A stretch of DNA of 64,000 nucleotides from the NCBI RefSeq assembly GCF_037042905.1, contig NC_087250.1, positions 18,104,001-18,168,000 on the forward strand, in the 5' to 3' direction. Numbering within the stretch: the stretch's first letter is position 1; each line of letters begins with the position of its first letter. Below, in pieces: positions 30,201 to 59,705 of the stretch. The DNA is from Lytechinus pictus. Its lineage: Eukaryota. The position numbers were made by a program, and so were the translations under genes. The notes below the pieces were generated by a model. It had not been told where the DNA came from, made no database searches, and was given only the letters and a program-made list of their open reading frames with translations.

Positions 30201-30252
<52 letters not shown>

Positions 30253-36459: not shown

Positions 36460-36491
<32 letters not shown>

Positions 36492-39400: not shown

Positions 39401-42088
39401 CTCGGTTATTCAAATTCAGTTTAGAATGGTTTGTTTTTAGATTAAAAGAATCAATCAAGGCATAAAAACGAATGACAATAAGGCATAGCATAGTGTACAA
39501 TATAACACAACACAAAAACAACAATTATTACATAGCTGAAGATAAACAAATTATGACAGAACATTGACCATACGACGTCAGCGAACTTAATCACAGAACA
39601 CATATAACATTAAACAAATCCGCTAATATATAGAATACAAAGTTTTATAATCAATATGAATCATATTGATATATGAACATTTCAAAAAAGTCAATGTTAA
39701 AATCAGAATGTTGATTTCCAGATCGTTAAAAATTATTAAGAATGGGAATGAATGGGAAGGTAAGATAGAAGGTGGAGTTGATAGGAATAAGGGAAATGAA
39801 TAAGGGAAATGTATTGAGAGATTTGATATAAAATTACATAGGAGGTAAAGTATTATGAGAAATGTATATTAAGAATAACGATTTCAAGTGAGAAGAAGAA
39901 TAAGAACAAAAAGAGAAGAAGTGGAAGGGCAAGAAGAATCAAAGGTAGAAGAACAATACCATATTAAACGAGACGAAACAAGTAAGTGAATGAAAAGACA
40001 GAAACATTAAAATACAAAGTAAATATACATATAGTACGAATATATAGGTACAAACCACTTGTTCCTAAAGTACACATTACAGTGCTATGTTTTTGGATGA
40101 ACGGCCAATAATATACATATTAACGTGCAGTCATGTGCGACGACTTCGGTGACGATTTCGTGATTCATATTTCAGGAATGCTCTTACCTCTAGTAGACTG
40201 AACACCATCCAAGGAAGGTAATCTGCAGTAAGCAATTAATACAAAATTATTCAACTTCTAATATCTTGAATCATATTTACTTCATCAACTGAAATAAATC
40301 ATTTAGAATATTCAAAAGAAAACCATAATTTTTCGATGGACTTCTGATAATAACGCATCAGTGAAAAGTATTCACATATCATGTGCCATTTCAAATTGCA
40401 CACGATGTTCTTTAAAGCTACACGGGCTAATCAAACGAAGATAATGTTGAAAGGACAATTCCATCCCAACAGAAAATTGGTTTGAATGATAAGATAAACT
40501 CCACACTAGCATAACACCGAATATTTAATCAAAATCGGGTTGGAAATAAGGTTTTCTCTTTTAAAGTTTCGCTCGATTAAAAAATAACATTTGTACAATA
40601 TGCACACTAGCGTACCTATGGGGGGGGGGGGGGGGCAGACAGACTGCCCCCCTGACGAGTCACAACCCATGCAAGGGACGTACCCCCCCCCCTGTCGAGT
40701 CACAACTGATCCCTGACGGGCCACCAGTGGCCCCCTCAATTGAAATTGAAGACCTTTTTTTTCTTTTGCTTGTCAATTTTTTGTTCGGGTGCGAAATGGC
40801 CTTTATATCCTGTTGAGGACCCTTTTTTCTGGCAGAAATCCTATATTTGTGGTTGATGACCCGTTTTTTTTTTTCTTGTCAATTTTTTTTTTGGCGGACG
40901 AATTTGCCCCCCCCCCCCCCCTGTTGAAAATCCTAGGTACGCTACTAAATATACACATTCTGGTCGGTATGCAAAAGAGGGAACTGATAATGTCACCCAC
41001 TTGCCATTTCCTTTGTATTTCATTATATAAAATATTCTAGATTTTCTCCTCATTCTCATATGAAGCAAGGTTTCATTCCACTCCGAGCATGTGGTATTAC
41101 CATTGCTTTAACGATTTTATGGTTCGGTCAAGATGGTCCTCATTGTCAAATCTGTAAAATTGAAATATTACACATTTCAAACAATAAAAATATACAAGTG
41201 GAATGCCTCTGGCCGTCTCACCTGCATCACGCGATTCAATATAGCAGCAGTGCTGATTTTGAAAACTACTATAACTCGCACAAGATGTTCAGTGATACTT
41301 GGTTACTCTTATTTCCACGTTTTATGAACTAGACCAATACACTTATAGAGATATGATGGCAATTCAACAAATACCCCCAACGTGGCCAAAGTTCTTTGAC
41401 CTTACATGACCTTTGACCTTGATCATGTGACCTGAAACTCGCACAGGATGTTCAGTGATACTTGATTACTATTATGTCCAAGTTTTATGAACTAGACCAA
41501 CACACTTTCAAATTTATGGCTGTAATTCAACAAATACCCAAATTTGGCCAAAGTTCATTGACCCTAAATGACCTTTGACCTTGATCATGTGACCTGAAAC
41601 TTGCACAGGATGTTCAGTAATACTTGATTACTATTATGTCCAAGTTTCATGAATCAGATCCATAAACTTTCAAAGTTATGATGGTAATTCAACAGATACC
41701 CCCAATTCGGCCAAAGTTCATTGACCCTAAATGACCTTTGACCTTGGTCATGTGACGTGAAACTCATGCAGAATGTTCAGTGATACTTGATTAACCTTAT
41801 GTATAAGTTTCATGAACTAGGTCCATATATTTTCTAAGTTATGATGACATTTCAAAAACTTAACCTTAGGTTAAGATTTTGATGTTGATTCCCCCAACAT
41901 GGTCTAAGTTCATTGACCCTAAATGACCTTTGACCTTGGTCATGTGACATGAAACTCAGGCAGGATGTTCAGTAATACTTGATTAACCTTATGGCCAAGT
42001 TTCATGAACTAGGTCCATATACTTTCTAAGTTATGCTGTCATTTCAAAAACTTAACCTCAGGTTAAGATTTGGTGTTGACGCCGCCGC

Positions 42089-42119
<31 letters not shown>

Positions 42120-45100
42120 GGAAAAGCGGCGCCTATAGTCTCACTCTGCTATGCAGGTGAGACAAAAAGGAAGCGTTAGGGACATCACCGACTCTTTCAT
42201 ACATGTCACTGATTTGTGCATATAACTTTTTTAGGAAAAATAAGCGAAACTTCAAAATATCATATAATTTTACATTCGATTGTAATAAAATTTTCAATGT
42301 TGTGCATGTTTGATTTTCCTCTATTGAAAATACATGTACATCAAAACCCGTTTGTACTGGAAATTTAGTTTTAAGTAATTGTTCACCTTGCCAATATCAT
42401 CTGTCTGATCATTTCATCCTTTGCATAGTGGATTGGTAGGCAATCTGCTTCATCCTTAATATCAATCCTGGCTCCATGTTCTAAGAGATAGAACACCAAT
42501 GCGTTTTCAGGAGATAACCTGCCACTGTAGTATTCTTTGGATACCTGCAACGGATGATTAATTTAGTTTGTGTGGTAATTATAGTATTGAAAACTAATTA
42601 GTCCATAAAGTGTTGATGTCATTAATTATGTAATAGGCTCAATGATAAAGCAATTTATGGTATGAATTAAATATTTACTTTCTCACAAATTTAATAAAGT
42701 GAAAAATAGTCTCTTATATGCTTTTTCGTTATATGTTTGTATCGTATTGCAATTAGCAGCGGATGCCAGAAATGCCATGATAATCGTACTTCGTTGACTT
42801 AAATGTTTTAAAATCCAAGTGTACACTAAAAATTGAGGCAAAGGTCTTTTCCAAGACTAACCTTTCTGAGTGTTTCGGTGTATTCAACATTCTTTTTCTT
42901 TTGGTAGCATAATTTGATAGCTTTATGAAGACATGTCTGACCGTCATTAGACTGTACATTGAGATCAAATCCTTTAGCAATCATCCTCTCAATGATGGAT
43001 GTAAGTCCGTGCATCACAGCTAGATGGATGGCCACTGAATCATTCTGGATTGACAAAATTATATAAACGTAGTAGAAAAATTAGCATTCTTGTAAATTGT
43101 AGGGAGAGCAGCATAAAATCTTCCATGAATATCAAACTGAAATAATTAACTCTTATTTTTTAATGGTAATCAAAGTACTGTTTTTTCTGTTGTACTGTTT
43201 TCCGAATGTTGCAGAACAAGCAAGTTTGCAAATATACATCAATATTCTATACAGTTTAAAAGGCTCCTTCATTTTCAATTATTTGCATAATGACCAAACG
43301 GCACTTTTTCAGCTATTTATAACTCCGTCAAAGAAAAATTTAAAGGATGTATGTATCGCCTACCTTAGCATCCCTGTTGTCAACTGGAAGATCACATCGT
43401 TGACTGATCAGATATTTGATGACGTCAGTATGGCCTAATCTAGCAGCAATGTGTAATGCAGTCTGACCATTATTATCCTCTTTAACAATCTCAGCTCTCT
43501 TACTGATCAGATATTTGATGACGTCAAGATGCCCATTGGAAGCAGCAATGTGTAATGCAGTCTGACCATCTTTATCCTCCTTATTGACCTTAGCTCCTCC
43601 ACTGATCAGATATTCGATGACGTCAATATGACCACTGGAAGCAGCACTGTGTAATGCAGTCCAACCATTTTTGTCCTTCTTATTGACCTCAGCTCCCTTA
43701 CTGACCAGATATTTCATGACGTCAATATGATCATTGGAAGCAGACCTGTGTAATGCAGTCTGACCATCATTATCCCCATTTTTTACATCAGCTCCTTTAC
43801 TGATCAGATATTTGATGACATCAATATGCCCATCGAAAGCAGCACTGTGTAAAGCAGTCATTCCATTTTTATCCTTCTCATTGATCTCAGCTCCTTCACT
43901 AATCAGATATTTGATGACATTAATATGTCCATTGAAAGCAGCACTGTGTAATGAAATCCAACCACTTTTATCCTTCTTGTTGATCTTAGCTCCCTTAATA
44001 ATAAGATGTTTGATGGCGTCAATATGACCATTGGAAGCAGCACTGTGTAATGCAGTCTCACCATCATTTTCCCCTTTATTGACCTCAGCTCCTTTACTGA
44101 TCAGATAATTGATGACATCAATATGCCCATTGGAAGCAGCAGTGTGTAATGCAGTCCAACCACTTATATCCTCCTTATTGACCTCAGCTCCCTTACTGAT
44201 CAGATATCTGATGACGTCAGTATGACCATTAGAAGCAGCACTGTGTATTGCAGTCCGACCATTATTATACTCCTTATTGACCTCAGCCCCTTCACTGATC
44301 AGATATTTGATGACGTCAGTATGACCATTGGAAGCAGCACTGTGTATTGCAGCCAGACCATCATTATCCTCCTTAACGACCTCAGCTCCCTTACTGATCA
44401 AAAATGTAGTGACGTCAAGATGCCCATTGGAAGCAGCAATGTGTAATGCAGTCCAACCACTTCTATCTTCCTTAATGACCTCAGCTCCCTTACTGATCAG
44501 ATATTTGATGACGTCAATGTGCCCATCGGAAGCAGCACAGTGTAATGCAGTCAAACCACTTCTATCCTCCTTATTGACCTCAGCTCCTTCACTGATCAGA
44601 TATTTGATGACGTCAATATAACCATTGGAAGCAGCACTGTGTAATGCAGTCCCACCACTTTTATCCTCCTTATTGACCTCAGCTCCTTCACTGATCAGAT
44701 ATTTGATGACGTCAGTATGACCATTGGAAGCAGCACAGTGTATTGCAGTCAGACCATCATTATCCTCCTTAAAGACATCAGCTCCCTTATCGATCAGATA
44801 TTTGATGGCATCAATATGCCCATTGGAGGCAGCACTGTGTAATGCAGTCCGACCATCATTAAACTCCTTATCGACCTCAGCCCCTTCACTGATCAGATAT
44901 TTCATGACGTCAATATTACCATTGGAAGCAGCACAGTGTAATGGAGGCCGACCATCATTATCCCCCTTATTGACCTCAGCTCCTTTACTGATCATATGTT
45001 TGATGACATCAATATGCCCATCGAAAGCAGCAATGTGTAATGCAGTCCAACCATTTTTATCCTCCTTATTGACCTCAGCTCCTTCACTGATCAGATATTT

Positions 45101-48100
45101 GATGACGTCAATACGACCAATGGAAACAGCACTGTGTAATGCAGTCTGACCATTATTATCCCCCTTATTGACCTCAGCTCCATGGCTCATCAGATATTTG
45201 ATGACGTCAATACGACCATTCTCAGCAGCACTGTGTAATGCAGTCCGACCATTATTATCCTTCTTATTGACCTCAGTTCCATTACTGATCAGATATTTGA
45301 TGACTTCAATATGGACTAACCTAGAAGCAATGTGTAATTCTGTCTGACCATCTCTTTCCCCCTTATTGACCTCAGCTCCTTCACTGATCAGATATTTGAT
45401 GACGTCAAGATGCCCATTGGAAGCAGCAATGTGTAATGCAGTCTGACAATCTTTATCCCCTTTATTGATCTTAGCTCCTCCACTGATCAGATATTCGATG
45501 ACGTCAATATGACCATTGGAAGCAGCACTATGTAATGCAGTCACACCATTTTTGTCCTTCTTATTGACCTCAGCTCCATTACTGATCAGATATTTGATGA
45601 CTTCAATATGGCCTAACCTAGAAGCAATGTGTAATGCTGTCTGACCATCTCTTTCCCCCTTATTGACCTCAGCTCCTTCACTGATCAGATATTTGATGAC
45701 GTCAAGATGCCCATTGGAAGCAGCAATGTGTAATGCAGTCTGACAATCTTTATCCCCTTTATTGACCTCAGCTCCCTTACTGACCAGATATTTCATGACG
45801 TCAATATGATCATTGGAAGCAGACCTGTGTAATGCAGTCTGACCATCATTATCCCCATTTTTGACATCAGCTCCTTTACTGATCAGATATTTGATGACAT
45901 CAATATGTCCATCGAAAGCAGCACTGTGTAATGCAGTAATTCCACTTTTATCCTTCTCATTGATCTCAGCTCCTTCACTAATCAGATATTTGATGACATT
46001 AATATGTCCATTGAAAGCAGCACTGTGTAATGAAAACCAACCACTTTTATCCTTCTTGTTGATCTTAGCTCCCTTAATAATAAGATGTTTGATGGCGTCA
46101 ATGTGACCATTGGAAGCAGCACTGTGTATGGCAGTCTCACCATCATTTTCCCCTTTATTGACCTCAGCTCCTTTACTGATCAGATAATTGATGACATCAA
46201 TATGCCCATTGGAAGCAGCACTGTGTAATGCAGTCCAACCACTTATATCCTCCTTATTGACCTCAGCTCCCTTACTGATCAGATATCTGATGACGTCAGT
46301 ATGACCATTAGAAGCAGCACTGTGTATTGCAGTCCGACCATTATTATACTCCTTATTGACCTCAGCCCCTTCACTGATCAGATATTTGATGACGTCAGTA
46401 TGACCATTGGAAGCAGCACTGTGTATTGCACTCAGACCATCATTATCCTCCTTAACGACCTCAGCTCCCTTACTGATCAAATATGTGATGACGTCAAGAT
46501 GCCCATTGGAAGCAGCAATGTGTAATGCAGTCCAACCACTTCTATCCTCCTTATTGACCTCAGCTCCTTCACTGATCAGATATTTGATGACGTCAATGTG
46601 CCCATCGGAAGCAGCACTGTGTAATGCAGTCAAACCACTTCTATCCTCCTTATTGACCTCAGCTCCTTCACTGATCAGATATTTGATGACGTCAATACGA
46701 CCATTCTTAGCAGCACTGTGTAATGCAGTCCGACCATTATTATCCTTCTTATTGACCTCAGTTCCTTCACTGATCAGATATTTGATGACGTCAGTATGAC
46801 CATTGGAAGCAGCACAGTGTATTGCAGTCAGACCATCATTATCCTCCTTAACGACCTCAGCTCCCTTATCGATCAGATATTTGATGACATCAATATGCCC
46901 ATTGGAAGCAGCACTGTGTAATGCAGTCCGACCATCATAATACTCCTTATCGACCTCAGCTCCTTCACTGATCAGATATTTCATGACGTCAATATGACCA
47001 TTGGAAGCAGCACAGTGTAATGGAGTCCGACCATCATTATCCCCCTTATTGACCTCAGCCCCTTCACTGATCATATATTTGATGACATCAATATGCCCAT
47101 CGAAACAAGCACTGTGTAATGCAGTCCAACCACTTTTATCCTCCTTATTGAGCTCAGCTCCTTCACTGATCAGATATTTGATGACGTCAAAACGACCAAT
47201 GGAAACAGCACTGTGTAATGCAGTCTGACCATTATTATCCCCCTTATTGACTTCAGCTCCATGGCTGATCAGATATTTGATGACGTCAATACGACCATTC
47301 TTAGCAGCACTGTGTAATGCAGTCCGACCATTATTATCCTTCTTATTGACCTCAGCTCCATTACTGATCAGATATTTGATGACTTCAATATGCCCTAACC
47401 TAGAAGCAATGTGTAATTCTGTCTGACCATCTCTTTCCCCCTTATTGACCTCAGCTCCTTCACTGATCAGATATTTGATGACGTCAAGATGCCCATTGGA
47501 AGCAGCAATGTGTAATGCAGTCTGACCATCTTTATCCCCTTTATTAACCTCAGCTCCTTTACTGATCAGATATTTGTTGACATCAAGATGCCCATTGGAA
47601 GCAGCAATGTGTAATGCAGTCTGACCATCTTTATCCCCTTTATTGACCTTAGCTCCTTCACTGATCAGATATTTGATGACGTCAGTATGACCATTGGAAG
47701 CAGCAAAGTGTATTGCAGTCAGACCATCATTATCCTCCTTAACGACCTCAGCTCCCTTACTGATCAGATATGTGATGACGTCAAGATACCCATTGGAAGC
47801 AGCACTGTGTAATGCAGTCCAACCGCTTCTATCCTCCTTAATGACCTCAGCTCCCTTACTGATCATATATTTGATGACGTCAATGTGCCCATTCGAAGCA
47901 GCACTGTGTAATGCAGTCAAACCATTTCTATCTTCCTTATTGACCTCAGCTCCTTCACTGATCAGATATTTGATGACGTCAATATGCCCATTGGAAGCAG
48001 CACTGGGTAATGCAGTCCCACCACTTTTATCCTCCTTTTTGACCTCAGCTCCTTCACTGATCAAATATTTGATGACATCAATATGCCCATTGGAAGCAGC

Positions 48101-51100
48101 ACTGTGTAATGCATTCCGACCATCATTATACTCCTTATCGACCTCAGCTCCTTCACTGATCAGATATTTGATGACGTCAATGTGCCCATCGGAAGCAGCA
48201 CTGTGTAATGCAGTCCAACCACTTCTATCCTCCTTATTGACCTCAGCTCCTTCACTGATCAGATATTTGATGACGTCAATATGACCATTGGAAGCAGCAC
48301 TGTGTAATGCAGTCCCACCACTTTTATGCTCCGTATTGACCTCAGCTCCTTCACTGATCAGATATTTGATGACGTCAGTATGACCATTGGAAGCAGCACA
48401 GTGTATTGTAGTCAGACCATCATTATCCTCCTTAACGACCTCAGCTCCCTTATTGATCAGATATTTGATGACATCAATATGCCCATTGGAAGAAGCACTG
48501 TGTAATGCAGTCCGACCATTATTATACTCCTTATCGACCTCAGCTCCTTCACTGGTCAGATATTTCATGACGTCAATATGACCATTGGAAGCAGCACAGT
48601 GTAATGGAGTCCGACCATCATTATCCCCCTTATTGACCTCAGCCCCTTCACTGATCATATGTTTGATGACATCAATATGCCCATCGAAAGCAGCACTGTG
48701 TAATGCAGTCCAACCACTTTTATCCTCCTTATTGACCTCAGCTCCTTCACTGATCAGATATTTGATGACGTCAATACGACCAATGGAAACAGCACTGTGT
48801 AATGCAGTCTGACCATTATTATCCCCCTTATTGACCTCAGCTCCATGGCTGATCAGATATTTGATGACGTCAATGCGACCATTCTTAGCAGCACTGTATA
48901 ATGCAGTCCGATCATTATTATCCTTCTTATTGACCTCATCTCCATTACTGATCAGATATTTGATTACTTCAATATGGCCTAACCTAGAAGCAATGTGTAA
49001 AGCTGTCTGACCATCTCTTTCCCCCTTATTGACCTCAGCTCCTTCACTGATCAGATATTTGATGACGTCAAGATGCCCATTGGAAGCAGCAATGTGTAAT
49101 GCAGTCTGACCATCTTTATCCCCTTTATTAACCTGAGCTCCTTCACTGATCAGATATTTGATGACGTCAAGATGCCCATTGGAAGCAGCAATGTGTAATG
49201 CAGTCTGACCATCTTTATCCCCTTTATTGACCTTAGCTCCTTCACTGATCAGATATTTGATGACGTCAGTATGACCATTGGAAGCAGCAAAGTGTATTGC
49301 AGTCAGACCATCATTATCCTCCTTAACGACCTCAGCTCCCTTACTGATCAGATATGTGATGACGTCAAGATACCCATTGGAAGCAGCACTGTGTAATGCA
49401 GTCCAACCGCTTCTATCCTCCTTAATGACCTCAGCTCCCTTACTGATCATATATTTGATGACGTCAATGTGCCCATTCGAAGCAGCACTGTGTAATGCAG
49501 TCAAACCATTTCTATCTTCCTTATTGACCTCAGCTCCTTCACTGATCAGATATTTGATGACGTCAATATGCCCATTGGAAGCAGCACTGGGTAATGCAGT
49601 CCCACCACTTTTATCCTCCTTTTTGACCTCAGCTCCTTCACTGATCAAATATTTGATGACATCAATATGCCCATTGGAAGCAGCACTGTGTAATGCATTC
49701 CGACCATCATTATACTCCTTATCGACCTCAGCTCCTTCACTGATCAGATATTTGATGACGTCAATGTGCCCATCGGAAGCAGCACTGTGTAATGCAGTCC
49801 AACCACTTCTATCCTCCTTATTGACCTCAGCTCCTTCACTGATCAGATATTTGATGACGTCAATATGACCATTGGAAGCAGCACTGTGTAATGCAGTCCC
49901 ACCACTTTTATGCTCCGTATTGACCTCAGCTCCTTCACTGATCAGATATTTGATGACGTCAATATGACCATTGGAAGCAGCACTGTGTAATGCAGTCCCA
50001 CCACTTTTATGCTCCGTATTGACCTCAGCTCCTTCACTGATCAGATATTTGATGACGTCAGTATGACCATTGGAAGCAGCACAGTGTATTGTAGTCAGAC
50101 CATCATTATCCTCCTTAACGACCTCAGCTCCCTTATTGATCAGATATTTGATGACATCAATATGCCCATTGGAAGAAGCACTGTGTAATGCAGTCCGACC
50201 ATTATTATACTCCTTATCGACCTCAGCTCCTTCACTGGTCAGATATTTCATGACGTCAATATGACCATTGGAAGCAGCACAGTGTAATGGAGTCCGACCA
50301 TCATTATCCCCCTTATTGACCTCAGCCCCTTCACTGATCATATGTTTGATGACATCAATATGCCCATCGAAAGCAGCACTGTGTAATGCAGTCCAACCAC
50401 TTTTATCCTCCTTATTGACCTCAGCTCCTTCACTGATCAGATATTTGATGACGTCAATACGACCAATGGAAACAGCACTGTGTAATGCAGTCTGACCATT
50501 ATTATCCCCCTTATTGACCTCAGCTCCATGGCTGATCAGATATTTGATGACGTCAATGCGACCATTCTTAGCAGCACTGTATAATGCAGTCCGATCATTA
50601 TTATCCTTCTTATTGACCTCATCTCCATTACTGATCAGATATTTGATTACTTCAATATGGCCTAACCTAGAAGCAATGTGTAAAGCTGTCTGACCATCTC
50701 TTTCCCCCTTATTGACCTCAGCTCCTTCACTGATCAGATATTTGATGACGTCAAGATGCCCATTGGAAGCAGCAATGTGTAATGCAGTCTGACCATCTTT
50801 ATCCCCTTTATTAACCTGAGCTCCTTCACTGATCAGATATTTGATGACGTCAAGATGCCCATTGGAAGCAGCAATGTGTAATGCAGTCTGACCATCTTTA
50901 TCCCCTTTATTGACCTTAGCTCCTTCACTGATCAGATATTTGATGACGTCAGTATGACCATTGGAAGCAGCAAAGTGTATTGCAGTCAGACCATCATTAT
51001 CCTCCTTAACGACCTCAGCTCCCTTACTGATCAGATATGTGATGACGTCAAGATACCCATTGGAAGCAGCACTGTGTAATGCAGTCCAACCGCTTCTATC

Positions 51101-54100
51101 CTCCTTAATGACCTCAGCTCCCTTACTGATCATATATTTGATGACGTCAATGTGCCCATTCGAAGCAGCACTGTGTAATGCAGTCAAACCATTTCTATCT
51201 TCCTTATTGACCTCAGCTCCTTCACTGATCAGATATTTGATGACGTCAATATGCCCATTGGAAGCAGCACTGGGTAATGCAGTCCCACCACTTTTATCCT
51301 CCTTTTTGACCTCAGCTCCTTCACTGATCAAATATTTGATGACATCAATATGCCCATTGGAAGCAGCACTGTGTAATGCATTCCGACCATCATTATACTC
51401 CTTATCGACCTCAGCTCCTTCACTGATCAGATATTTGATGACGTCAATGTGCCCATCGGAAGCAGCACTGTGTAATGCAGTCCAACCACTTCTATCCTCC
51501 TTATTGACCTCAGCTCCTTCACTGATCAGATATTTGATGACGTCAATATGACCATTGGAAGCAGCACTGTGTAATGCAGTCCCACCACTTTTATGCTCCG
51601 TATTGACCTCAGCTCCTTCACTGATCAGATATTTGATGACGTCAGTATGACCATTGGAAGCAGCACAGTGTATTGTAGTCAGACCATCATTATTCTCCTT
51701 AACGACCTCAGCTCCCTTATTGATCAGATATTTGATGACATCAATATGCCCATTGGAAGAAGCACTGTGTAATGCAGTCCGACCATTATTATACTCCTTA
51801 TCGACCTCAGCTCCTTCACTGGTCAGATATTTCATGACGTCAATATGACCATTGGAAGCAGCACAGTGTAATGGAGTCCGACCATCATTATCCCCCTTAT
51901 TGACCTCAGCCCCTTCACTGATCATATGTTTGATGACATCAATATGCCCATCGAAAGCAGCACTGTGTAATGCAGTCCAACCACTTTTATCCTCCTTATT
52001 GACCTCAGCTCCTTCACTGATCAGATATTTGATGACGTCAATACGACCAATGGAAACAGCACTGTGTAATGCAGTCTGACCATTATTATCCCCCTTATTG
52101 ACCTCAGCTCCATGGCTGATCAGATATTTGATGACGTCAATGCGACCATTCTTAGCAGCACTGTATAATGCAGTCCGATCATTATTATCCTTCTTATTGA
52201 CCTCATCTCCATTACTGATCAGATATTTGATTACTTCAATATGGCCTAACCTAGAAGCAATGTGTAAAGCTGTCTGACCATCTCTTTCCCCCTTATTGAC
52301 CTCAGCTCCTTCACTGATCAGATATTTGATGACGTCAAGATGCCCATTGGAAGCAGCAATGTGTAATGCAGTCTGACCATCTTTATCCCCTTTATTAACC
52401 TGAGCTCCTTCACTGATCAGATATTTGATGACGTCAAGATGCCCATTGGAAGCAGCAATGTGTAATGCAGTCTGACCATCTTTATTCCCTTTATTGACCT
52501 TAACTCCTACACTAATCAGATAGTTGATGACGTCAGTATGACAATTGGAAGCAGCACTGTGTAATGCAGTCAAACCATTTCTAGCTTCCTTATTGACCTC
52601 AGCTCCTTCACTGATCAGATATTTGATGACGTCAATATGACCATCGGAAGCAGCACTGTGTAATGCAGTCCCACCAGTTTTATCCTCCTTATTGACCTCA
52701 GCTCCTTCACTGATCAGATATCTGATGACGTCAGTATGACCCTTAGAAGCAGCACTGTGTATTGCAGTCCGACCATAATCATCCTCCTTATTGACCTCAG
52801 CTCCTTCACTGATCAGATATTTGATGACGTCAGTATGACCATTGGAAGCAGCACAGTGTATTGCAGTCAGACCATCATTATCCTCCTTATTGACCTCAGC
52901 TCCCTTACTGATCAAATATGTGATGACGTTAAAATGCCCATTGGAAGCAGCAATGTGTAATGCAGTCACGCCAATTTTATTCTCCTTATTGACCTCAGCT
53001 CCTTGACTGATCAGATATTTGATGACGTCAGTATGACCATTGGAAGCAGCACAGTGTATTGCAGTCAGACCATTATTATCCTCCTTAACGACCTCAGCTC
53101 CCTTATCGATCAGATATTTGATGACATCAATATGCCCATTGGAAGCAGCACTGTGTAATGCACTCCGACCATCATTATACTCCTTATCGACCTCAGCTCC
53201 TTGACTGATCAGATATTTGATGACGTCATTATGACCATTAGAAGCAGCACAGTGTATTGCAGTCAGACCATTATTATCCTCCTTAACGACCTCAGCTCCC
53301 TTATCGATTAGATATTTGATGACATCAATATGCCCACTGGAAGCAGCACAGTGTAATGGATTCTGACCATTATTATCCCCCTTATTGACCTCAGCCCCTT
53401 CACTGATCATATGTTTGATGACATCAATATGCCCATCGAAAGCAGCACTGTGTAATGCAGTCCAACCACTTTTATCCTCCTTAATGACCTCAGCTCCCTT
53501 ACTGATCAGATATTTGATAACTTCAATATGCCCTAACCTAGAAGCAATGTGTAATGCAGTCTGGCCATCTTTATCCCCCTTAATGACCTCAGCTCTTTCA
53601 TTGATCAGATATTCGATGACGTTAATATGACCATTTAAAGCAGCACAGTGTAATGGAGTCCGACCATCATTATCCCCCTTATTGACCTCAGCCCATTCAC
53701 TGATCATATGTTTGATGACATCAATATGCCCATCGAAAGCAGCACTGTGTAATGCAGTCCAACCACTTTTATCCTCCTTATTGACCTCAGCTCCTTCACT
53801 GATCAGATATTTCATGACGTCAAGATTACCATTGGAAGAAGCACAGTGTAATGGATTTTGACCATTATTATCCCCCTTATTGACCTCAGCCCCTTCACTG
53901 ATCAGATATTTGATGACATCAATATGCCCATCGAAAGCAGCACTGTGTAATGCAGTCCAACCACTTTTATCCTCCTTATTGAGCTCAGATCCTTCACTGA
54001 TCAGATATTTGATGACGTCAATACGACCAATGGAAACAGCACTGTGTAATGCAGTCTGACCATTATTATCTCCCTTATTGACCTCAGCTCCATGGCTGAT

Positions 54101-57100
54101 CAGATATTTGATGACGTCAATACGACCATTCTTAGCAGCACTGTGTAATGCAGTCCGATCATTATTATCCTTCTTATTGACCTCAGCTCCATTACTGATC
54201 AGATATTTGATGACTTCAATATGGCCTAACCTAGAAGCAATGTGTAATGCTGTCTGACCATCTCTTTCCCCCTTATTGACCTCAGCTCCATTACTGATCA
54301 GATATTTGATGACTTCAATATGGCCTAACCTAGAAGCAATGTGCAATGCTGTCTGACCATCTCTTTCCCCCTTATTGACCTCAGTTCCTATACTGGTCAG
54401 ATATTTGATGACGTCAAGATGCATATTGGAAGCAGCACTGTGTAATGCAGTCCAACCATTTCTATCTTCTTTATTGACCTCAGCTCCTTCACTGAACAGA
54501 TATTTGATGACATCAATATCGGAAGCAGCACTGTGTAATGCAGTCCCACCACTTTTATCCTCCTTTTTTACCTCAGCTCCTTCACTTATCAGATATTTAA
54601 TGACGTCAGTATGACCATTAGAAGCAGCACAGTGTATTGCAGTCAGACCATCATTATCCTCCTTAACGACCTCAGCTCCCTTACTAATCAGATATTTCAT
54701 GACCTCAAGATTAGCATTGGAAGCAGCACTGTGCAATGCAGTCCGACCATTATTATCCTCCTTATCGACCTCAGCTCCCTTACTGATCAGATATTTGATA
54801 ACTTCAATATGCCCTAACCTAGAAGCAATGTGTAATGCAGTCTGGCCATCTTTATCCCCCTTAATGACCTCAGCTCTTTCATTGATCAGATATTCGATGA
54901 CATTAATATGACAATTGAAAGCAGCAAAGTGTAATGGAGTCTGACCATTATTATCCCCCTTATTGACATCAGCCCCTTCACTGATCAGATGTTTGATGAC
55001 ATCAATATGCCCATCGAAAGCAGCACTGTGTAATGCAGTCCAACCACTTTTATCCTCCTTATTGAGCTCAGCTCCTTCACTGATCAGATATTTGATGACG
55101 TCAATACTACCAATGGAAACAGCACTGTGTAATGCAGTCTGACCATTATTATCCCCCTTATTGACCTCAGCTCCATGGCTGATCAGAGATTTGATGACGT
55201 CAATACGACCATTCTTAGCAGCACTGTGTAATGCAGTCCGACCATTATTATCCTTCTTATTGACCTCAGCTCCATTACTGATCAGATATTTAATGACTTC
55301 AATATGGCCTAACCTAGAAGCAATGTGTAATTCTGTCTGACCATCTCTTTCCCCCTTATTGACCTCAGCTCCTTTACTGATCAGATATTTGATGACGTCA
55401 AGATGCCCATTGGAAGCAGCAATGTGTAATGCAGTCTGACCATCTTTATCCCCTTTATTAACCTTAGCTCCTTCACTGATCAGATATTTGATGACGTCAA
55501 GATGCCCATTGGAAGCAGCAATGTGTAATGCAGTCTGACGATCTTTATCCCCTTTATTGGCCTTAGCTCCTTCACTGATCAGATATTTGATGACGTCAGT
55601 ATGACCACTGGAAGCAGCACTGTGTATTGCAGTCATACCATCATTATCCTCCTTAACGACCTCAGCTCCCTTACTGTTCATATATGTGATGACGTCAAGA
55701 TGCCCATTGGAAGCAGCACTGTGTAATGCAGTCCAACCGCTTCTATCCTCCTTAATGACCTCAGCTCCCTTACTGATCAGATATTTGATGACGTCAATGT
55801 GCCCATTCGAAGCAGCACTGTGTAATGCAGTCAAACCATTTCTATCTTCCTTATTGACCTCAGCTCCTCCACTGATCAGATATTTGATGACGTCAATATG
55901 CCCATCGGAAGCAGCACTGTGTAATGCAGTCCCACCACTTTTATCTTCCTTATTGACCTCAGCTCCTTCACTGATCAGATATCTGATGACGTCAGTATGA
56001 CCATTAGAAGCAGCACTTTGAATTGCAGTCCGACCATCTTTATCCTCCTTATTGACCTCAGCTCCTTCACTGATCAGATATTTGATGGCGTCAGTATGAC
56101 CATTGGAAGCAGCACAGTGTATTGCAGTCAGACCATCATTATCCTCCTTAACGACCTCAGCTCCCTTATCGATCAGATATTTGATGACATCAATATGCCC
56201 ATTGGAAGCAGCACTGTGTAATGCACTCCGACCATCATTATACTCCTTATCGACCTCAGCTCCTTCACTGATCAGATATTTCATAACCTCAAGATTACCG
56301 TTGGAAGCAGCACTGTGTAATGCAGTCCGACCATTATTATCCTCCTTATCGACCTCAGCTCCCTTACTGATCAGATATTTGATGACGTCAAGATGCCAAT
56401 TGCAAGCAGCACTGTGTAATGCAGTCCGACCATTATTAGCCTCCTTAAAGACCTCAGCTCCCTTACTGATGAGATATTTGATAACTTCAATATGCCCTAA
56501 CCTAGAAGCAATGTGTAATGCAGTCTGGCCATCTTTATCCCCCTTAATGACCTCAGCTCTTTCATTGATCAGATATTCGATGACGTTAATATGACCATTG
56601 AAAGCAGCACAGTGTAATGGAGTCTGACCATTATTATCCCCCTTATTGACCTCAGCCCCTTCACTGATCATATGTTTGATGACATCAATATGCCCATCGA
56701 AAGCAACACTGTGTAATACAGTCCAACCCCTTTTATCCTCCTTATTGAGCTCAGCTCCTTCACTGATCAGATATTTGATGACGTCAATACGACCATTGGA
56801 AGCAGCACTGTGTAATGTAGTCTGACTATTATTATCCCCCTTATTGACCTCAGCTCCATGGCTGATCAGACATTTGATGACGTCAATAGGACCATTCTTA
56901 GCAGCACTGTGTAATGCAGTCCGACCATTATTATCCTTCTTATTGACCTCACCTCCATTACTGATCAGATATTTGATGACTTCAATATGGCCTAACCTAG
57001 AAGCATTGTGTACTGCAGTCCGACCATTATTATCCTTCTTATTGACCTCAGCTCCTTTACTAATCAGATATTTAATGACGTCAAGATGCCCATTGGAAGT

Positions 57101-57868
57101 AGCAATGTGTAATGCAGTCTGACCATCTTTATCCCCTTTATTGACCTCAGCTCCTACACTGATCAGATATTTGATGACGTCAGTATGACCATTGGAAGCA
57201 GCACTGTGTATTGCAGTCCGACCATCATTATCCCCTTTATTGACCTCAGCTCCTTCACTGATCAGATATTTGATGACGCCAAGATGCCCATTGGAAGCAG
57301 CCGTGTGTAACGCAGTCTGACCATCTTTATCACCTTTATTTCCCTCAGTTCCTTCACTGATCAGATATTTGATGACGTCAATGTGACCATTGGAAGCAGC
57401 ACTGTGTAATGCAGTCCAACCATTATTGTCCTCCTTAACGACCTCAGCACTCTTATTGATCAGATATTTGATGACGTCAAGATGCCCATTGGAAGCAGCA
57501 CTGTGTAATGCAGTCCGACCATTATTATCCTCCCTAAGGATCTCAGCTCCCTTACTGATCAGATATTTGATGACGTCAATGTGGCCAAACCTAGCAGCAC
57601 TGTGTAATGCAATCCGACCAATATTATCCTCCTTATTGACCTCTGCTCCTTGACTGATCAGATATTTTATGACGTCAATATGACCATTGGAAGCAGCAAT
57701 TTCTAATGAAGTCCGACCAACTTTATCTTTCTTATTGACCTCTGCTCCCTTCCCGATCAGAGTTTCAATGACGTCAATTTGAGAATGGAAAGCAGCCCTG
57801 TGTAATGCAGTCCAACCACTATTATCCGCCTTATTGACATCAGCTCCTTGGCTTATCAAATAATTCAT
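20688..57868 (-). CDS. Giant ankyrin-repeat / ZU5-UPA / multi-death-domain protein: 21 exons, ~6,070 aa from ATG 57868; start uncertain, possibly a 5'-damaged allele
   Basis: Hand-spliced GT-AG exons with matching phases: 57868-43364, 43044-42862, 42544-42387, 40222-40188, 39310-38978, 38422-38175, 37470-37342, 36312-36150, 35804-35759, 35409-35123, 34451-34436, 34152-33893, 32983-32855, 32626-32333, 26242-25994, 24802-24458, 24184-23964, 23600-23466, 23051-22907, 21869-21842, 20985-20688; no internal stop seen. Confidence 0.8.
21842..21869 (-). CDS. 28-nt linker exon (VEPDYEKTQ)
   Basis: TTTAACAG acceptor, GTAAG donor; bridges phase 1 to phase 2. Confidence 0.7.
22131..22323. other. Assembly gap (193 N) inside an intron
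   Basis: Run of N. Confidence 1.
22525..22809 (-). mobile_element. Tc1/mariner-like terminal arm (same family as 7200)
   Basis: Ends TTTTTTCTGGGACGCACTG|TA. Confidence 0.7.
22907..23051 (-). CDS. Exon, UPA-like domain 2, C-terminal part
   Basis: VHVCSLLSGGCNTINIILPPSTDDKIVRVSIEQGQ..; phase 0 to 1. Confidence 0.75.
23291..23357 (-). mobile_element. Isolated L2-type 3' tail remnant
   Basis: Minus strand GCGCCTTGAGCACTCTGCCGCAGAGTGGATTTGGCGCTTTATAAAT..TATTATTA resembles the LINE tail at 15040-15107. Confidence 0.6.
23466..23600 (-). CDS. Exon, UPA-like domain 2, middle part
   Basis: GVRGQNYSLSEPFYEVTTVIKFNLESAEDDIKISC..; phase 0 to 0. Confidence 0.75.
23964..24184 (-). CDS. Exon, end of ZU5-2 and start of UPA-2
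   Basis: ..FEISEDIVTFSTRHLQYFAL..; phase 1 to 0. Confidence 0.78.
24458..24802 (-). CDS. Exon, ZU5 domain 2
   Basis: GLIDHEGGELR..VSIPSGAIP..LITPPIRC..LLKPATIVLPH. Confidence 0.88.
24840..25127 (-). mobile_element. Full-length tRNA-derived SINE with an L2-like 3' tail
   Basis: Minus-strand head GGGCGCGACGTGGTCTGGTGG..GGTCGTGGGTTCGAATC; tail GCGCCTCGGA..GGCGCTATACAAAT..(ATT)n. Confidence 0.82.
25994..26242 (-). CDS. Exon, death-like domain 4
   Basis: DLIDLSQRLDLPASEI..ILHMLQRWVKQGGTRLRLLEIVQAFNFNDAAEHI; phase 1 to 1. Confidence 0.8.
26610..27720 (+). repeat. ~75-bp minisatellite (about 14-15 units) in the left arm; inverted copies at 30945-31210
   Basis: GGAGGACAATGTAAGATGAGATGAGGCAAGTGTGCAGTGAGGTTTTTTCAAAAGAGGAGATAATACAAATATATAT. 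Confidence 0.92.
30199..30249. repeat. (TA)n microsatellite
   Basis: Direct reading. Confidence 0.95.
31573..32208. mobile_element. MITE with ~200-bp imperfect TIRs, TA-flanked
   Basis: TTCACAAGCGCACT..CAATTGGTTCCGGAA..GTCACAAAA vs TTTTGTGAC..TTCCGGAACCAATTG..AGTGCGCTTGTGAA. Confidence 0.75.
32333..32626 (-). CDS. Exon, divergent death-like domain 3
   Basis: ..LALQVANALRLDVNDII..LAWKLLHQWCRRL..; phase 1 to 1. Confidence 0.75.
32855..32983 (-). CDS. Exon, acidic/Pro-rich linker
   Basis: DDENSDDVTPLYPDVNPDPSPQEPEEDEDEENEDWKIIEYSES; phase 1 to 1. Confidence 0.75.
33009..33331. mobile_element. Harbinger-like MITE
   Basis: Imperfect TIR GGTCAGTATTCTGAAGTCGGGTT / AACCTGACTTCGGAAAACGGGCC; AGA on both flanks. 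Confidence 0.6.
33893..34152 (-). CDS. Exon, death domain 2 (absent from the ORF track)
   Basis: EISDCTLLQFSRHIIKEKFYEIGRQLGFDEIELHHIEHRSLYNRKDANIQMLSLWK..; phase 2 to 1. Confidence 0.85.
34436..34451 (-). CDS. Predicted 16-nt microexon (DIDPTE)
   Basis: AAG|ATATTGACCCGACTGA|GTAAGT; supplies the required phase 1 to 2 shift. Confidence 0.6.
35123..35409 (-). CDS. Exon, death domain 1
   Basis: ..QFYDLGIALGFTIAELDRIEYRRFGDRQQATYDMLLAWRGR..; phase 2 to 1. Confidence 0.88.
35759..35804 (-). CDS. 46-nt linker exon
   Basis: DGPVCQFPSKQTDVT; TTAG acceptor, GTAAGT donor; phase 1 to 2. Confidence 0.7.
36150..36312 (-). CDS. Exon, UPA-like domain 1, C-terminal part
   Basis: IVSLRDLLAKISQCISIYVPPSEDDLNFAVITITITQAG..; phase 0 to 1. 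Confidence 0.75.
37342..37470 (-). CDS. Exon, UPA-like domain 1, middle part
   Basis: ATQEESRQQSYHRCHRSVPFNVEKKAGDVTITCHREEEEIESQ; phase 0 to 0. Confidence 0.75.
38175..38422 (-). CDS. Exon, end of ZU5-1 and start of UPA-1
   Basis: ..PYCRMYKRHLELYIGHCAEWWVLIP..CTPYVP..; phase 1 to 0. Confidence 0.78.
38630..38781 (-). mobile_element. tRNA-derived SINE (second family)
   Basis: Minus strand GGTGCCGCGGCCGAGTGGTCTAAGGCAC..GGGGTTCGATTCCCGGC (A and B boxes); imperfect cloverleaf. Confidence 0.7.
38978..39310 (-). CDS. Exon, ZU5 domain 1
   Basis: VNLEDHGISMYLPPGAV..LICYGIRCDPHTLIFNQPVKINIPH; phase 1 to 1. Confidence 0.85.
40188..40222 (-). CDS. 35-nt linker exon (LPSLDGVQSTR)
   Basis: CTGCAG acceptor, GTAAG donor; phase 2 to 1. 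Confidence 0.72.
40605..40947. mobile_element. hAT-like MITE nested in a Kolobok-like element (~40450-42330)
   Basis: TIR TAGCGTACCTA / TAGGTACGCTA; 8-bp TSD AATATGCA / AATATACA. Confidence 0.7.
41194..42168. mobile_element. Helentron/HINE-like non-autonomous element carrying ~160-190-bp tandem repeats
   Basis: Subterminal IR GTCTCACCTGCAT / ATGCAGGTGAGAC, terminal hairpin, (GCC)n; GACCTTTGACC recurs at about 41409, 41570, 41734 and 41925. Confidence 0.75.
42387..42544 (-). CDS. Exon, terminal divergent ankyrin/cap repeat
   Basis: VSKEYYSGRLSPENALVFYLLEHGARIDIKDEADCLPIHYAKDEMIRQMILA; phase 0 to 2. Confidence 0.82.
42862..43044 (-). CDS. Exon, divergent C-terminal ankyrin repeats
   Basis: NDSVAIHLAVMHGLTSIIERMIAKGFDLNVQSNDGQTCLHKAI..; phase 0 to 0. 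Confidence 0.85.
43364..57868 (-). CDS. Giant single exon encoding about 146 tandem ankyrin repeats (4,835 aa)
   Basis: 33-aa unit GxTALHxAAxxGHxDVIKYLISxGAEVNKxDxx; AAG|GTAGG donor at 43364/43363. Confidence 0.93.
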
Positions 57869-59705
57869 GACGTCAAACCGACCAAACTTAGCAGAACGGT
57901 TTAATGCAGTCCAACTATCATTATCCTCCTTATTGACCTCAGCTCCTTCACTGATCAGATATTTAATGACGGCAATATGACCATTGGAAGCAGCACTGTG
58001 TATTGCAGTCCGACCATCATTATCCTCCTAATTGACCTCAGCCCCTTCAACTGATCAGATATTTGATGACGTCAATATGACTCATCTCAGCAGCACGGTG
58101 TAGTGCAGTCCAACCATCATTATCCTCCTTATTGACCTCAGCTCCTTCACTAATCAGATATTTGATGACGTCAATATGACCATTGGAAGCAGCACTTTGT
58201 ATTGCAGTCCGACCATCATTATCCTTCTTATTGACCTCAGCTCCCTCACTGATCAGATATTTAATGACGGCAATATGACCATTGGGAGCAGCACGGTGTA
58301 TTGCAGTCCGACCATTATTATCCTCCTTATTGACCTCAGCCCCTTCACTATTCAGATATTTGATGACGTCAATATGACCATTGGAAGCAGCACTGTGTAT
58401 TGCAGTCCGACCATCATTATCTTCCTTATGGACCTCAGCTCCTTCACTAATCAGATATTTGATGACGTCAATATGACCATTGGAAGCAGCACTGTGTATT
58501 GCAGTCCGACCATCATTATCTTCCTTATTGACCTCAGCTCCCTTACTGATCAGATATTTATTAACGGCAATATGAACATTGGAAGCAGCACGGTGTATTG
58601 CAGTCCGACCATCATTATCCTCCTTATTGACCTCAGCCCCTTCACTGATCAGATATTTGATGACCTCAATATGACTCATCTCAGCAGCACGGTGTAGTGC
58701 AGTCCAACCATGATTATCCTCCTTATTGACCTCAGCTCCTTCACTGATCAGATATTTGATGACGTCAATATGACCATTGGAAGTAGCACTGTGTAATGCA
58801 GTCCGACCATTATTATCCTCCTTAGCGACCTCAGCTCCCATACTGATCAGATATTTGATGACGTCAATATGACCTTTGGAAGCAGCACTGTGTAATGCAG
58901 TCAAACCACCATTATCCTCCTTATTGACCTCAGCTCCCTCACTGATTAGATATTTGATGACATCAATATGACCATTGGAAGCAGCACTGTGTAATGCAGT
59001 CAAACCACCATTATCCTTCATATTGAACTCAGCTCCCTTACTGATCAGATATTTAATGACATCAATATGACCAATTGAAGCAGTACTGTGTATTGCAGTC
59101 CGACAATCATTATCCTCCTTATTGACCTCAGCTCCTTCACTGATCAGATATTTGATAACGTCAATATGACCATTGGAAGCAGCACTGTGTAATGCAGTCC
59201 GACCATCATTATCCTCCTTATTAACCTCAGCTCCTTCACTGATCAGATATTTGATGACGTCAATATGACTATTGAAGGCAGCACTGTGAAATGCAGTCCG
59301 ACCATTATTATCCTCCATATTGACCTAATCTCCTTGACTGATAGATATTTGATGACTTCAATATGATAATTTTGAGCAGCACGGTCTAATGAAGTCAAGC
59401 CATTATTATCCTCTTTTTTTAACCTTAGCTCCTTGACTTATCAGATATTTGATGACGTCAATATGACAATCGAAAGCAGCAATATGTAGTGCAGTCTGAC
59501 CATTATCATCCTCCTAATATTGACCTCAGCTCCTTGATTGAAATTTGATGACTTCAATATGACCATTTTGAGTAGCACGGTGTAATGCAATCCGACCAAC
59601 ATGACCAATTTTATCCTCCTTATTGACCTCTGCTCCTTGAATTGTAATATTTTTAATGAAGACAATGACCTTTCTGAGCAGAATCGTGTAATGAAGTCCG
59701 ACCAT
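43395..59705 (-). repeat. 99-bp coding tandem array (~165 units) with higher-order duplications
   Basis: Near-identical blocks recur at offsets of 1584, 1683 and 2079 bp (16, 17 and 21 x 99). Confidence 0.95.

What the first reader, a model, noticed from the sequence alone, without database searches (positions are those of the whole stretch)
47400..52500. Three near-identical higher-order blocks of 16-17 repeats: very recent unequal crossing-over inside a coding exon
Seen: identical antisense shadow ORFs start at 47694, 49278 and 50961, spaced 1584 (16x99) and 1683 (17x99). One block carries an extra copy of the TEHKSGGTALH unit near 49900-50010. Rare variants (ALPSAAS, GDEVNK, RNALH) recur in all three blocks. 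Inference: ongoing in-frame expansion and contraction, so strong allelic length polymorphism is expected, possibly somatic as well.
Basis: seen in the sequence. Interest (0 to 1): 0.7.

Follow-up and report, generated by a model that had tools for sequence, protein, structure and literature searches.

The report
Freshly triplicated block in giant ankyrin exon
Inside a 14.5-kb open reading frame made of about 146 ankyrin repeats, in what looks like a sea-urchin genome, a block of 16 repeats has very recently been copied to three near-identical tandem copies by misaligned recombination; this is a clean example of a known way in which repeat proteins grow, not a new mechanism.

Summary
A 99-bp array (43403-59720, 164 units) encodes, on the minus strand, a 4842-aa stop-free ankyrin-repeat frame. 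Within it, 47583-52485 (4903 bp) is three tandem copies of a 16-unit block. Copies C and B differ only by one exact extra 99-bp unit. Copy A differs from both by one base (51694).

The two block junction units are exact chimeras of the two outer boundary units, with a 52-bp identical exchange window. That is the footprint of unequal homologous exchange, not of homogenisation.

Older, more diverged multi-unit copies (97%, about 95%, 92%) surround the blocks. Seven of 17 paralogous arrays in the same genome carry their own multi-unit duplications at 99% identity or more, so the process runs through the whole family.

Coding status is supported by sequence statistics: stop-making changes are avoided only in this frame, variability depends on position, there is a splice donor, and downstream exons encode ZU5 and Death domains. 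No RNA evidence supports it, and the 5' 18 units are broken.

Copy number in reads, allelic polymorphism and somatic change could not be tested, because only short contigs from other individuals were on hand. This is a new member of a known kind: concerted evolution of coding repeats. Interest is moderate.

The parts
43403..59720 (-). Tandem array of 164 units of 99 bp (33-aa ankyrin repeats)
   Evidence: TRF finds period 99, 163.7 copies, 84% matches. My own segmentation gives 164 units. Pfam Ank, Ank_2 and Ank_4 score E 1e-146 to 1e-155 on one block.
43340..57868 (-). Open reading frame of 4842 aa covering units 18-163. The only indel inside it is one in-frame 6-bp deletion, in unit 51, near 54503-54595.
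50850..52485 (-). Block A, the 5'-most copy in the gene: 16 units, with the first unit only partly inside the copy. It differs from blocks B and C by one base, T at 51694, which is derived because the older copy has C at 46843.
49167..50849 (-). Block B: 17 units (1683 bp). It is identical to block C apart from one exact extra 99-bp unit.
47583..49166 (-). Block C, the 3'-most copy: 16 units (1584 bp).
49819..50060 (-). Zone of exact period-99 identity (242 bp) that holds the single-unit duplication (units 97 and 98, NTEHKSGGTALH type).
50840..50938 (-). Junction unit 88, an exact chimera: positions 1-37 match unit 121 and positions 90-99 match unit 72.
49157..49255 (-). Junction unit 105, identical to unit 88.
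52424..52522 (-). Boundary unit 72, the 5' parental unit. It differs from the junction units only at positions 9, 14, 20 and 37.
47573..47671 (-). Boundary unit 121, the 3' parental unit. It differs from the junction units only at positions 90 and 95.
46765..47582 (-). Older partial fourth copy of the block. It has 24 differences in 818 bp (97.1% identity) against 48349-49166.
43415..47473 (-). Older 21-unit duplication: units 123-142 against units 144-163, 106 differences in 1980 bp. The core of 7 units is about 98% identical.
47694..48284 (+). Antisense 196-aa 'shadow' ORF, with identical copies at 49278-49868 and 50961-51551. It is a by-product of a stop-poor antisense frame of the unit, and there is no evidence that it is a gene.
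57869..59720 (-). The 5' 18 units of the array, broken by stops and by four +/-1-2-bp unit spacings (100, 98, 100, one of them twice), plus one unit spaced 96.
43362..43366 (-). Predicted splice donor AAG|GT(AGG) that ends the giant exon. The same ...DNRDAKVG... end is found in paralogue L013.
20691..43080 (-). Downstream exon-like open frames of the same gene:
- ANK cap, 42829-43080
- ZU5, 38937-39347
- Death, 35115-35450 and 33888-34157
- ZU5, 24390-24875
- weak Death, 20691-20996

Best explanation
The three blocks are a real and very young tandem triplication of a 16-unit (1584-bp) segment inside the giant ankyrin-repeat exon of an ANK-ZU5-Death-domain gene.

Proposed sequence of events:
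1. Two 'C-type' units lay 16 units apart (the ancestors of units 72 and 121). They misaligned at meiosis or during sister-chromatid repair, and an exchange resolved inside a 52-bp stretch where they were identical. This duplicated the 16 units between them and created a chimeric junction unit.
2. The two perfect 1584-bp copies then misaligned again, or a template switch occurred, giving a third copy.
3. One 99-bp unit was duplicated in the middle copy, and one C>T change arose in copy A.

Every exchange is in unit register (99 = 33 codons), so the frame is kept and the protein gains 16, 16 and 1 repeats.

Shown here: the geometry, the chimeric junction, the near-zero divergence, the ladder of older multi-unit copies, and the same kind of fresh duplication in paralogues.

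Inferred: the mechanism (homologous unequal exchange rather than replication template switching), the order of events, and that the locus is still length-polymorphic.
For: - Exact self-matches of 1727, 844 and 795 bp at lags of 17, 33 and 16 units.
- One substitution and one 99-bp indel are the only differences among the three copies.
- Junction units 88 and 105 are exact chimeras of units 121 (5' part) and 72 (3' part).
- Derived variants (ALPSAAS, NGDEVNK, GRNALH, TALY) are shared by all three blocks. The NGDEVNK and TALY changes are absent from the matching unit of the older copy, unit 124.
- There is an age ladder of multi-unit copies: 100%, 97.1%, about 95%, about 92%. The letter map shows the core order C-F-E-G-A-(H|IJ)-D-B recurring at least 8 times.
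- Seven of 17 paralogous arrays have their own multi-unit duplications at 99% identity or more, with exact runs of 300-580 bp at lags of 4-21 units.
- There are no Ns in the array, and no frameshift in 14.5 kb, which argues for high base accuracy.
- Three distinguishable block versions exist (T/16 units, C/17 units, C/16 units). An assembler cannot invent these from a single copy.
Against: - No read spanning the 4.9 kb could be examined. The only runs on hand were 60-110-nt Logan contigs from individuals that differ from the assembly, holding 27% and 15% of the sampled words.
- Two haplotypes with two blocks each, wrongly joined by the assembler, would produce the same picture.
- Homologous exchange cannot be told from template switching within 52 bp of homology using sequence alone.
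- No RNA support: run X14 gave one partial read. That run carries the label of organism B, whose DNA holds only 15% of the words, so this says little.
Confidence: 0.7

Rival explanations
1. Assembly artefact. The individual carries two haplotypes with fewer blocks each (for example A-C and A-B, or B-C), or a two-block array, and the assembler strung the versions together or over-expanded a perfect repeat.
For: Perfect repeats of 1.6 kb are where assemblers err. No spanning read could be checked. No alternative haplotig is present in G000 for comparison.
Against: - The chimeric junction unit needs at least two real tandem copies.
- Three distinguishable versions exist.
- There is no gap or N in or near the array.
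- The 14.5-kb frame has no indel error.
- 4.9 kb is well within the length of one long read.
- Paralogues show the same phenomenon at sizes (300-580 bp) that are trivial to assemble.
- Even under this rival, the two haplotypes would differ in block content, and that is itself recent length change.
Confidence: 0.15
2. Gene conversion. Three pre-existing, diverged 16-unit copies were homogenised, with no change in copy number.
For: Concerted evolution of coding repeats includes conversion (PMC5100051). The array already had a multi-unit periodicity.
Against: - It would need tracts covering 4.9 kb, with sharp ends exactly one period plus 52 bp apart, and junction units that happen to be exact chimeras of the outer units.
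- Older copies in the array differ in unit content: units are missing or replaced. Three pre-existing copies of identical order are therefore unlikely.
Confidence: 0.07
3. The duplication is real, but the array is no longer a working exon. The gene is a recently dead member of the family, and the blocks are neutral satellite-like turnover.
For: - The 5' 18 units are broken by stops and frameshifts, whereas the neighbouring paralogues L013 and L014 are open from acceptor to donor.
- Overall dN/dS between copies is about 1.
- There are essentially no reads in RNA run X14.
- The array is more than twice as long as any paralogue found.
Against: - There are no stops in 14.5 kb despite about 16% divergence among units. 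None of the 11 possible stop-making changes forms a stop, against 182 of 286 other changes seen, and the stop variants are present in the other five frames.
- Nonsynonymous change is concentrated at codons 5, 12, 14, 15 and 17, while G6, G16, A23, G27 and V31 hold despite synonymous change, for example G27 with 72 synonymous against 9 nonsynonymous.
- Lesions run at about 3 per kb in the 5' 1.8 kb and at 0 in the next 14.5 kb, so the break may simply mark a shifted exon start.
Confidence: 0.2

Closest known systems
High-internal-conservation (HIC) ANK/WD/TPR repeat domains of fungal NOD-like receptors (Podospora het-d/het-e/nwd family and relatives)
   Same: The repeats are tandem 33-42-aa solenoid units that stay very similar within a gene. 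Concerted evolution is ascribed to unequal crossing-over, variation is concentrated at a few surface positions, and repeat number differs among isolates (PMC4986451; PMC12222747). Here too variability sits at a few codons and multi-unit copies are up to 100% identical.
   Different: The array here is followed by ZU5 and Death domains; no NACHT or NB-ARC domain was seen in the window. There are 146-164 units instead of about 7-16. Mean unit-to-unit amino-acid identity is 69%, below the 85% criterion, so only the higher-order copies qualify. Polymorphism was not tested. The organism is an animal; PMC4986451 finds HIC repeats in only 0.8% of metazoan ANK/TPR/WD repeats.
Coding repeat arrays with population-level unequal crossing-over (yeast FLO1, Drosophila dumpy, spider and moth silk genes)
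   Same: In-frame gain and loss of whole repeat units happens by misaligned recombination inside one large exon, and the repeats evolve in concert (PMC5100051; PMC9779670 and PMC12962854 were listed and not read).
   Different: Those repeats are mostly disordered or fibrous low-complexity modules. Here each unit is a folded ankyrin repeat with a conserved framework.
Higher-order repeats of satellite DNA, and multi-domain 'super-repeat' duplications in proteins (nebulin triplicate region, NBPF Olduvai triplets, LPA kringle IV-2). These are named from my own knowledge and were not checked here.
   Same: A multi-unit period has much higher identity between higher-order copies than between neighbouring units. 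The youngest copies are in the middle of the array and more diverged ones lie towards the ends.
   Different: Unlike satellites, this array is an open frame with protein-level constraint. The protein examples are multi-exon duplications, whereas here everything lies within one exon.
Canonical ankyrins (ANK1/2/3: 24 ANK repeats, ZU5-ZU5-UPA, Death domain)
   Same: The domain order is the same: ANK repeats, then ZU5, then Death domain. Sea-urchin relatives are annotated 'ankyrin-3-like', 'ankyrin-1-like' or 'ANKRD50-like'.
   Different: There are 146-164 repeats instead of a fixed 24. Identity to the best sea-urchin models is only 41-57%. The ZU5/Death module appears twice. No orthology to ankyrins was shown.

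Membership tests
Ankyrin repeat (Pfam PF00023 / PF12796 / PF13637) | 33-residue units that match the Ank profiles above the gathering score | tested here: met
   Block C (527 aa): Ank_4 E 1.2e-155, Ank_2 E 9.8e-151, Ank E 3e-146, with 15 stretches.
Higher-order repeat made by unequal exchange | Copies one multi-unit period apart are much more alike than neighbouring units | tested here: met
   99.9-100% identity at 16/17/33 units, against about 82% at 1 unit.
Higher-order repeat made by unequal exchange | The junction unit is a chimera of the two boundary units, with the exchange inside shared identity | tested here: met
   Units 88 and 105 match unit 121 at positions 1-37 and unit 72 at positions 90-99; the 52 bp between are shared.
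Higher-order repeat made by unequal exchange | Copy number differs among chromosomes or individuals | not testable with these tools
   Only 60-110-nt contigs from other individuals were available, and no spanning reads.
HIC repeat sensor domain (fungal NLR type) | Internal repeats at least 85% identical over at least 100 aa | tested here: inconclusive
   The criterion is met by the higher-order copies (100% over 527 aa) but not by single units (mean pairwise amino-acid identity 69%).
HIC repeat sensor domain (fungal NLR type) | Diversifying selection at a few positions of the binding surface | tested here: inconclusive
   Nonsynonymous change is concentrated at codons 5, 12, 14, 15 and 17, with 0-8 synonymous changes there, while the framework is fixed. 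No formal site test was run and nothing was mapped on a structure. The match to DARPin randomised positions is recalled from memory, not verified.
HIC repeat sensor domain (fungal NLR type) | Coupled to a NOD (NACHT / NB-ARC) module | tested here: not met
   The ten largest minus-strand open frames downstream carry an ANK cap, ZU5 and Death domains only. The region upstream of the array was not scanned for NACHT.
Canonical ankyrin (ANK1-3) | 24 ANK repeats followed by ZU5-ZU5-UPA and a Death domain | tested here: not met
   ZU5 and Death domains are present, but the array has 146 units in frame and 164 in all.

The most novel reading that the evidence does not exclude
This gene and its roughly 17 or more paralogues would be an echinoid counterpart of fungal HIC-NLR sensors. 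Their ankyrin arrays would serve as fast-diversifying recognition surfaces wired to ZU5/Death-domain signalling. New specificities would be made in the germline by in-frame multi-unit exchange plus change at five or six surface positions, so that array length and content differ between individuals. A somatic version of the same process is not excluded, but nothing supports it; I put it at 0.03 or less.
Probability: 0.22. Interest if true: 0.7.

Novelty: new member of a known kind. Interest (0 to 1): 0.42.

Why it matters
The locus catches domain-repeat expansion nearly in the act, with both parental units and the recombinant junction still intact. Such a footprint is rarely this clean for a folded repeat in an animal gene.

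If reads confirm the blocks, the locus would be a ready marker for measuring unequal-exchange rates and length polymorphism in a coding array. It would also flag an echinoid ANK-ZU5-Death family whose arrays turn over quickly, which is the pattern seen in non-self recognition genes elsewhere.

There is also a practical point. Gene models, short-read assemblies and RNA mapping will be unreliable for this family.

Tried and rejected
(1) Read support. One search for runs and one laying of reads were allowed, and both caps are now used.
- They gave only 60-110-nt Logan contigs, mostly multi-mapping and laid on the first copy, so depth across the blocks means nothing.
- The best holders carry 27% and 15% of the sampled words and show variants absent from the assembly, so they are other individuals or a related form.
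- RNA run X14 gave one partial read. That is uninformative for the same reason.

(2) Search for an independent gene model of the same locus.
- With the 4842-aa frame (region 1750-3470), no protein of 2663-8473 aa exceeds 42% identity.
- With one block, sea-urchin ANK-ZU5 models reach 41-57%.
- So there was no second assembly to compare copy number with.

(3) Search for an alternative haplotig in G000. The best match elsewhere is 85%.

(4) Whole-copy dN/dS as a test of coding. It is about 1 and cannot separate neutrality from a mix of constraint and diversification. I replaced it with the stop-variant test and the per-codon profile.

(5) The antisense 196-aa ORFs as genes. Rejected: they follow from a stop-poor antisense frame of the consensus unit.

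(6) A contig of run X2 that joins 52575 to 50104 in unit register. With only 37 nt on the short side, it is too weak to count as a structural variant.

(7) A literature check of the DARPin randomised positions. The paper I read does not list them, so that mapping remains recalled knowledge.

Exons were searched one by one by reference.
Full report
WHAT IS THERE

The window is G000:C6:18104001-18168000 of an 812-Mb, 368-contig assembly. Tandem Repeats Finder reports one 99-bp array at 43403-59602 with 163.7 copies and 84% matches. On the minus strand it reads as 33-residue ankyrin repeats. The stretch 43340-57868 is one open frame of 4842 aa. One block of it scores E 1e-146 to 1e-155 against Pfam Ank, Ank_2 and Ank_4.

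My own segmentation gives 164 units. Units 18-163 are in frame, and the only irregularity among them is an in-frame 6-bp deletion in unit 51. The first 18 units (57869-59720) contain stops and unit spacings of 96, 100, 98 and 100 bp. The array holds no N; the window's two N runs are at 710-837 and 22131-22323.

CHECK OF THE OBSERVATION

- The three plus-strand ORFs of 196 aa start at 47694, 49278 and 50961.
- Base-by-base comparison gives:
  - 47583-48377 = 49167-49961 (795 bp, no difference);
  - 48235-49961 = 49918-51644 (1727 bp, no difference);
  - 47583-49218 against 50850-52485, one difference (C at 48427 and 50110, T at 51694).
- So 47583-52485 (4903 bp) is three tandem copies of a 1584-bp, 16-unit segment plus 52 bp.
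- The middle copy carries one extra, exact 99-bp unit (period-99 identity over 49819-50060).
- The rare protein variants ALPSAAS, NGDEVNK and GRNALH recur once in each copy.

For scale, neighbouring units are about 82% identical, all unit pairs average 84%, and the best match anywhere else in the genome is 85%.

HOW THE BLOCKS AROSE

The decisive detail is the junction.

- The block is bounded by two units of the same type, unit 72 (52424-52522) at the 5' side and unit 121 (47573-47671) at the 3' side.
- The two internal junction units, 88 and 105, are identical to each other. At positions 1-37 they read exactly as unit 121, and at positions 90-99 exactly as unit 72.
- The 52 bases between are the same in all four units.

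This is what an unequal homologous exchange between two units 16 apart leaves behind. It also explains why the repeated span is three periods plus 52 bp. A second misalignment of the now perfect 1584-bp copies (or a template switch) gives the third copy. The single-unit duplication and the C>T change at 51694 are later events; the change is derived because the older copy has C at 46843.

Gene conversion of three older copies would not be expected to give these sharp ends and chimeric junctions. It is also unlikely because older copies in the array differ in unit content.

The mechanism and the order of events are inferences. The geometry is shown.

IS THE PROCESS ONGOING?

Around the three blocks lie older multi-unit copies:
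- 46765-47582 is 97.1% identical to the end of the block (24 differences in 818 bp);
- units 123-142 against units 144-163 show 106 differences in 1980 bp at a lag of 21 units;
- a slide of the block along the array finds further copies at 92%.

A letter map of unit types shows the core order C-F-E-G-A-(H or I-J)-D-B at least eight times. Identity falls steadily with distance along the array.

Seventeen paralogous arrays were fetched from the same genome (C6 at 17.84-18.08 and 24.4-26.8 Mb; C2, C8, C9, C13, C15, C19). They are 15 to about 75 units long, and their longest open frame spans all or nearly all of each detected array segment. Seven have their own multi-unit duplications at 99% identity or more, with exact runs of 300-580 bp at lags of 4-21 units.

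Repeated in-register multi-unit duplication is therefore a property of the family. This array is its largest and freshest case.

IS IT A CODING EXON?

For:
- Of the 11 single-base changes of the consensus unit that would make a stop, none forms a stop in 145 units. Two of the base changes do occur, but with a second change in the same codon. By contrast, 182 of 286 other changes are seen. If each stop variant had the same 64% chance of being seen, finding none would have a probability of about 1e-5.
- In the other five frames the stop variants are seen at 11/16, 22/25, 3/5, 11/20 and 17/20.
- Change depends strongly on position. Codons 17, 15, 14, 5 and 12 are altered in 67-108 of 145 units, almost only nonsynonymously. 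G6, G16, A23, G27 and V31 hardly change despite synonymous variation (G27: 72 synonymous, 9 nonsynonymous). This mix explains why whole-copy dN/dS is about 1.
- From memory, the five most variable codons correspond to positions randomised in designed ankyrin repeat proteins. I could not verify the position list in the paper I read.
- The frame ends at AAG|GTAGG (43364/43363), the same ...DNRDAKVG... end as paralogue L013.
- Downstream minus-strand frames encode an ANK cap, ZU5, two Death domains, a second ZU5 and a weak Death domain.

Against:
- The 5' 18 units are broken, while the neighbouring paralogues are open from acceptor to donor. This agrees with note s1-317750.
- RNA run X14 gave a single partial read. 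That run is labelled organism B, whose DNA runs hold only 15% of the array's sampled words. The 95% likeness threshold may therefore simply have excluded its reads.

I rate a working exon as likely, about 0.75-0.8, but unproven.

IS IT AN ASSEMBLY ARTEFACT?

I could not test this directly. The one run search and the one read-laying run gave only 60-110-nt contigs, mostly multi-mapping and laid on the first copy, from individuals that differ from the assembly.

The indirect arguments favour a real structure:
- the chimeric junction needs at least two true tandem copies;
- three distinguishable versions exist (T with 16 units, C with 17 units, C with 16 units);
- there is no gap nearby;
- 14.5 kb without a single frame error argues for accurate consensus;
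- 4.9 kb is short for a long read;
- paralogues show the same phenomenon at trivially assemblable sizes.

The remaining risk is a mis-join of two haplotypes with two blocks each. That would itself be an allelic length difference. I put this risk at about 0.15.

COMPARISON WITH WHAT IS KNOWN

The phenomenon is concerted evolution of coding domain repeats by unequal crossing-over. It is described for FLO1, dumpy and the fungal het-d/het-e WD repeats (PMC5100051).

The closest functional parallel is the 'high internal conservation' ANK, TPR and WD repeats of fungal NOD-like receptors. These show repeat-number polymorphism and hypervariable positions on the binding face (PMC4986451). They are known to be mis-assembled from short reads but recovered from long reads (PMC12222747).

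Differences here:
- an animal gene;
- ZU5/Death domains instead of a NOD module;
- 146-164 units;
- only 69% mean amino-acid identity between single units.

Very long ankyrin proteins as such are not unique. The word search returned many of 2,700-6,500 aa from Wolbachia, abalone and metagenomes, all at 42% identity or below. The nearest named relatives are sea-urchin 'ankyrin-3-like', 'ANKRD50-like' and 'RF_0381-like' ANK-ZU5 models at 41-57%, which is why I take the genome for an echinoid.

VERDICT

- Observation: confirmed.
- Interpretation: partly supported. The recent unequal exchange is well supported. The coding exon is likely. Polymorphism is plausible but untested. Somatic change has no evidence.
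- Novelty: a new member of a known kind.
- Interest: moderate (0.42), mainly for the unusually clean junction footprint, the size of the array, and the hint of a fast-turning ANK-Death-domain family in an echinoid.

A withheld follow-up report on the same stretch exists in this scan. I did not see it.

Noticed in passing
window 57869-59720 (-): The 5' 18 units of the array are broken by stops and by four 1-2-bp spacing errors; one further unit is spaced 96. The next 14.5 kb has none. The neighbouring paralogues L013 and L014 are open from a pyrimidine-rich acceptor through an N-terminal cap repeat to the donor. The exon start of this gene may have moved to about 57.9 kb, or the gene may be dying from its 5' end.
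   Followed up: partly
window 54503-54595 (-), unit 51: An in-frame 6-bp deletion removes the 'GH' of the repeat (…SAASD-IDVIK). It is the only indel inside the 4842-aa frame.
   Followed up: yes
L011-L027 (G000 C6 17.84-18.08 Mb and 24.4-26.8 Mb; C2, C8, C9, C13, C15, C19): There are at least 17 paralogous ankyrin arrays of 15 to about 75 units whose longest open frame spans all or nearly all of each array segment. Several have fresh multi-unit duplications: L015 535 bp exact at 11 units, L022 580 bp at 4 units, L012 437 bp at 21 units, L011 388 bp at 4 units. Five members, including this one, sit on the minus strand within about 320 kb of C6.
   Followed up: partly
window 26779-27718 and 30945-31211: A 76-78-bp tandem array (12.6 copies) lies among the ZU5/Death exon-like frames, presumably in introns, and a shorter array of the same unit lies in inverted orientation 3.2 kb away. 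It has a strong local GC skew (0.375).
   Followed up: no
window 41273-42079: Tandem arrays of 163-bp and 192-bp units lie between the ANK-cap exon and the first ZU5 exon, followed by a CGC/CGCCGT microsatellite at 42080-42120.
   Followed up: no
window 52575 / 50104 (run X2): One short contig from a DNA run of organism B joins 52575 to 50104 in unit register. It makes a chimeric unit (5' part as unit 96, 3' part as unit 71) that is not in the assembly. It could be an allelic or paralogous variant, but with only 37 nt on the short side it is too weak to count.
   Followed up: no
window 47354-47460 (runs X1 and X2): Both DNA runs show only G at 47393 and G at 47418, which are the states of the blocks, and not the C and T of the older fourth copy. 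These individuals therefore differ from the assembly at the edge of the blocks.
   Followed up: no
window 43343-57868 (-): In a set of 5.8 billion proteins, no protein of 2663-8473 aa is more than 42% identical to the block region. Gene models of this size for this family seem to be missing from public annotation.
   Followed up: partly
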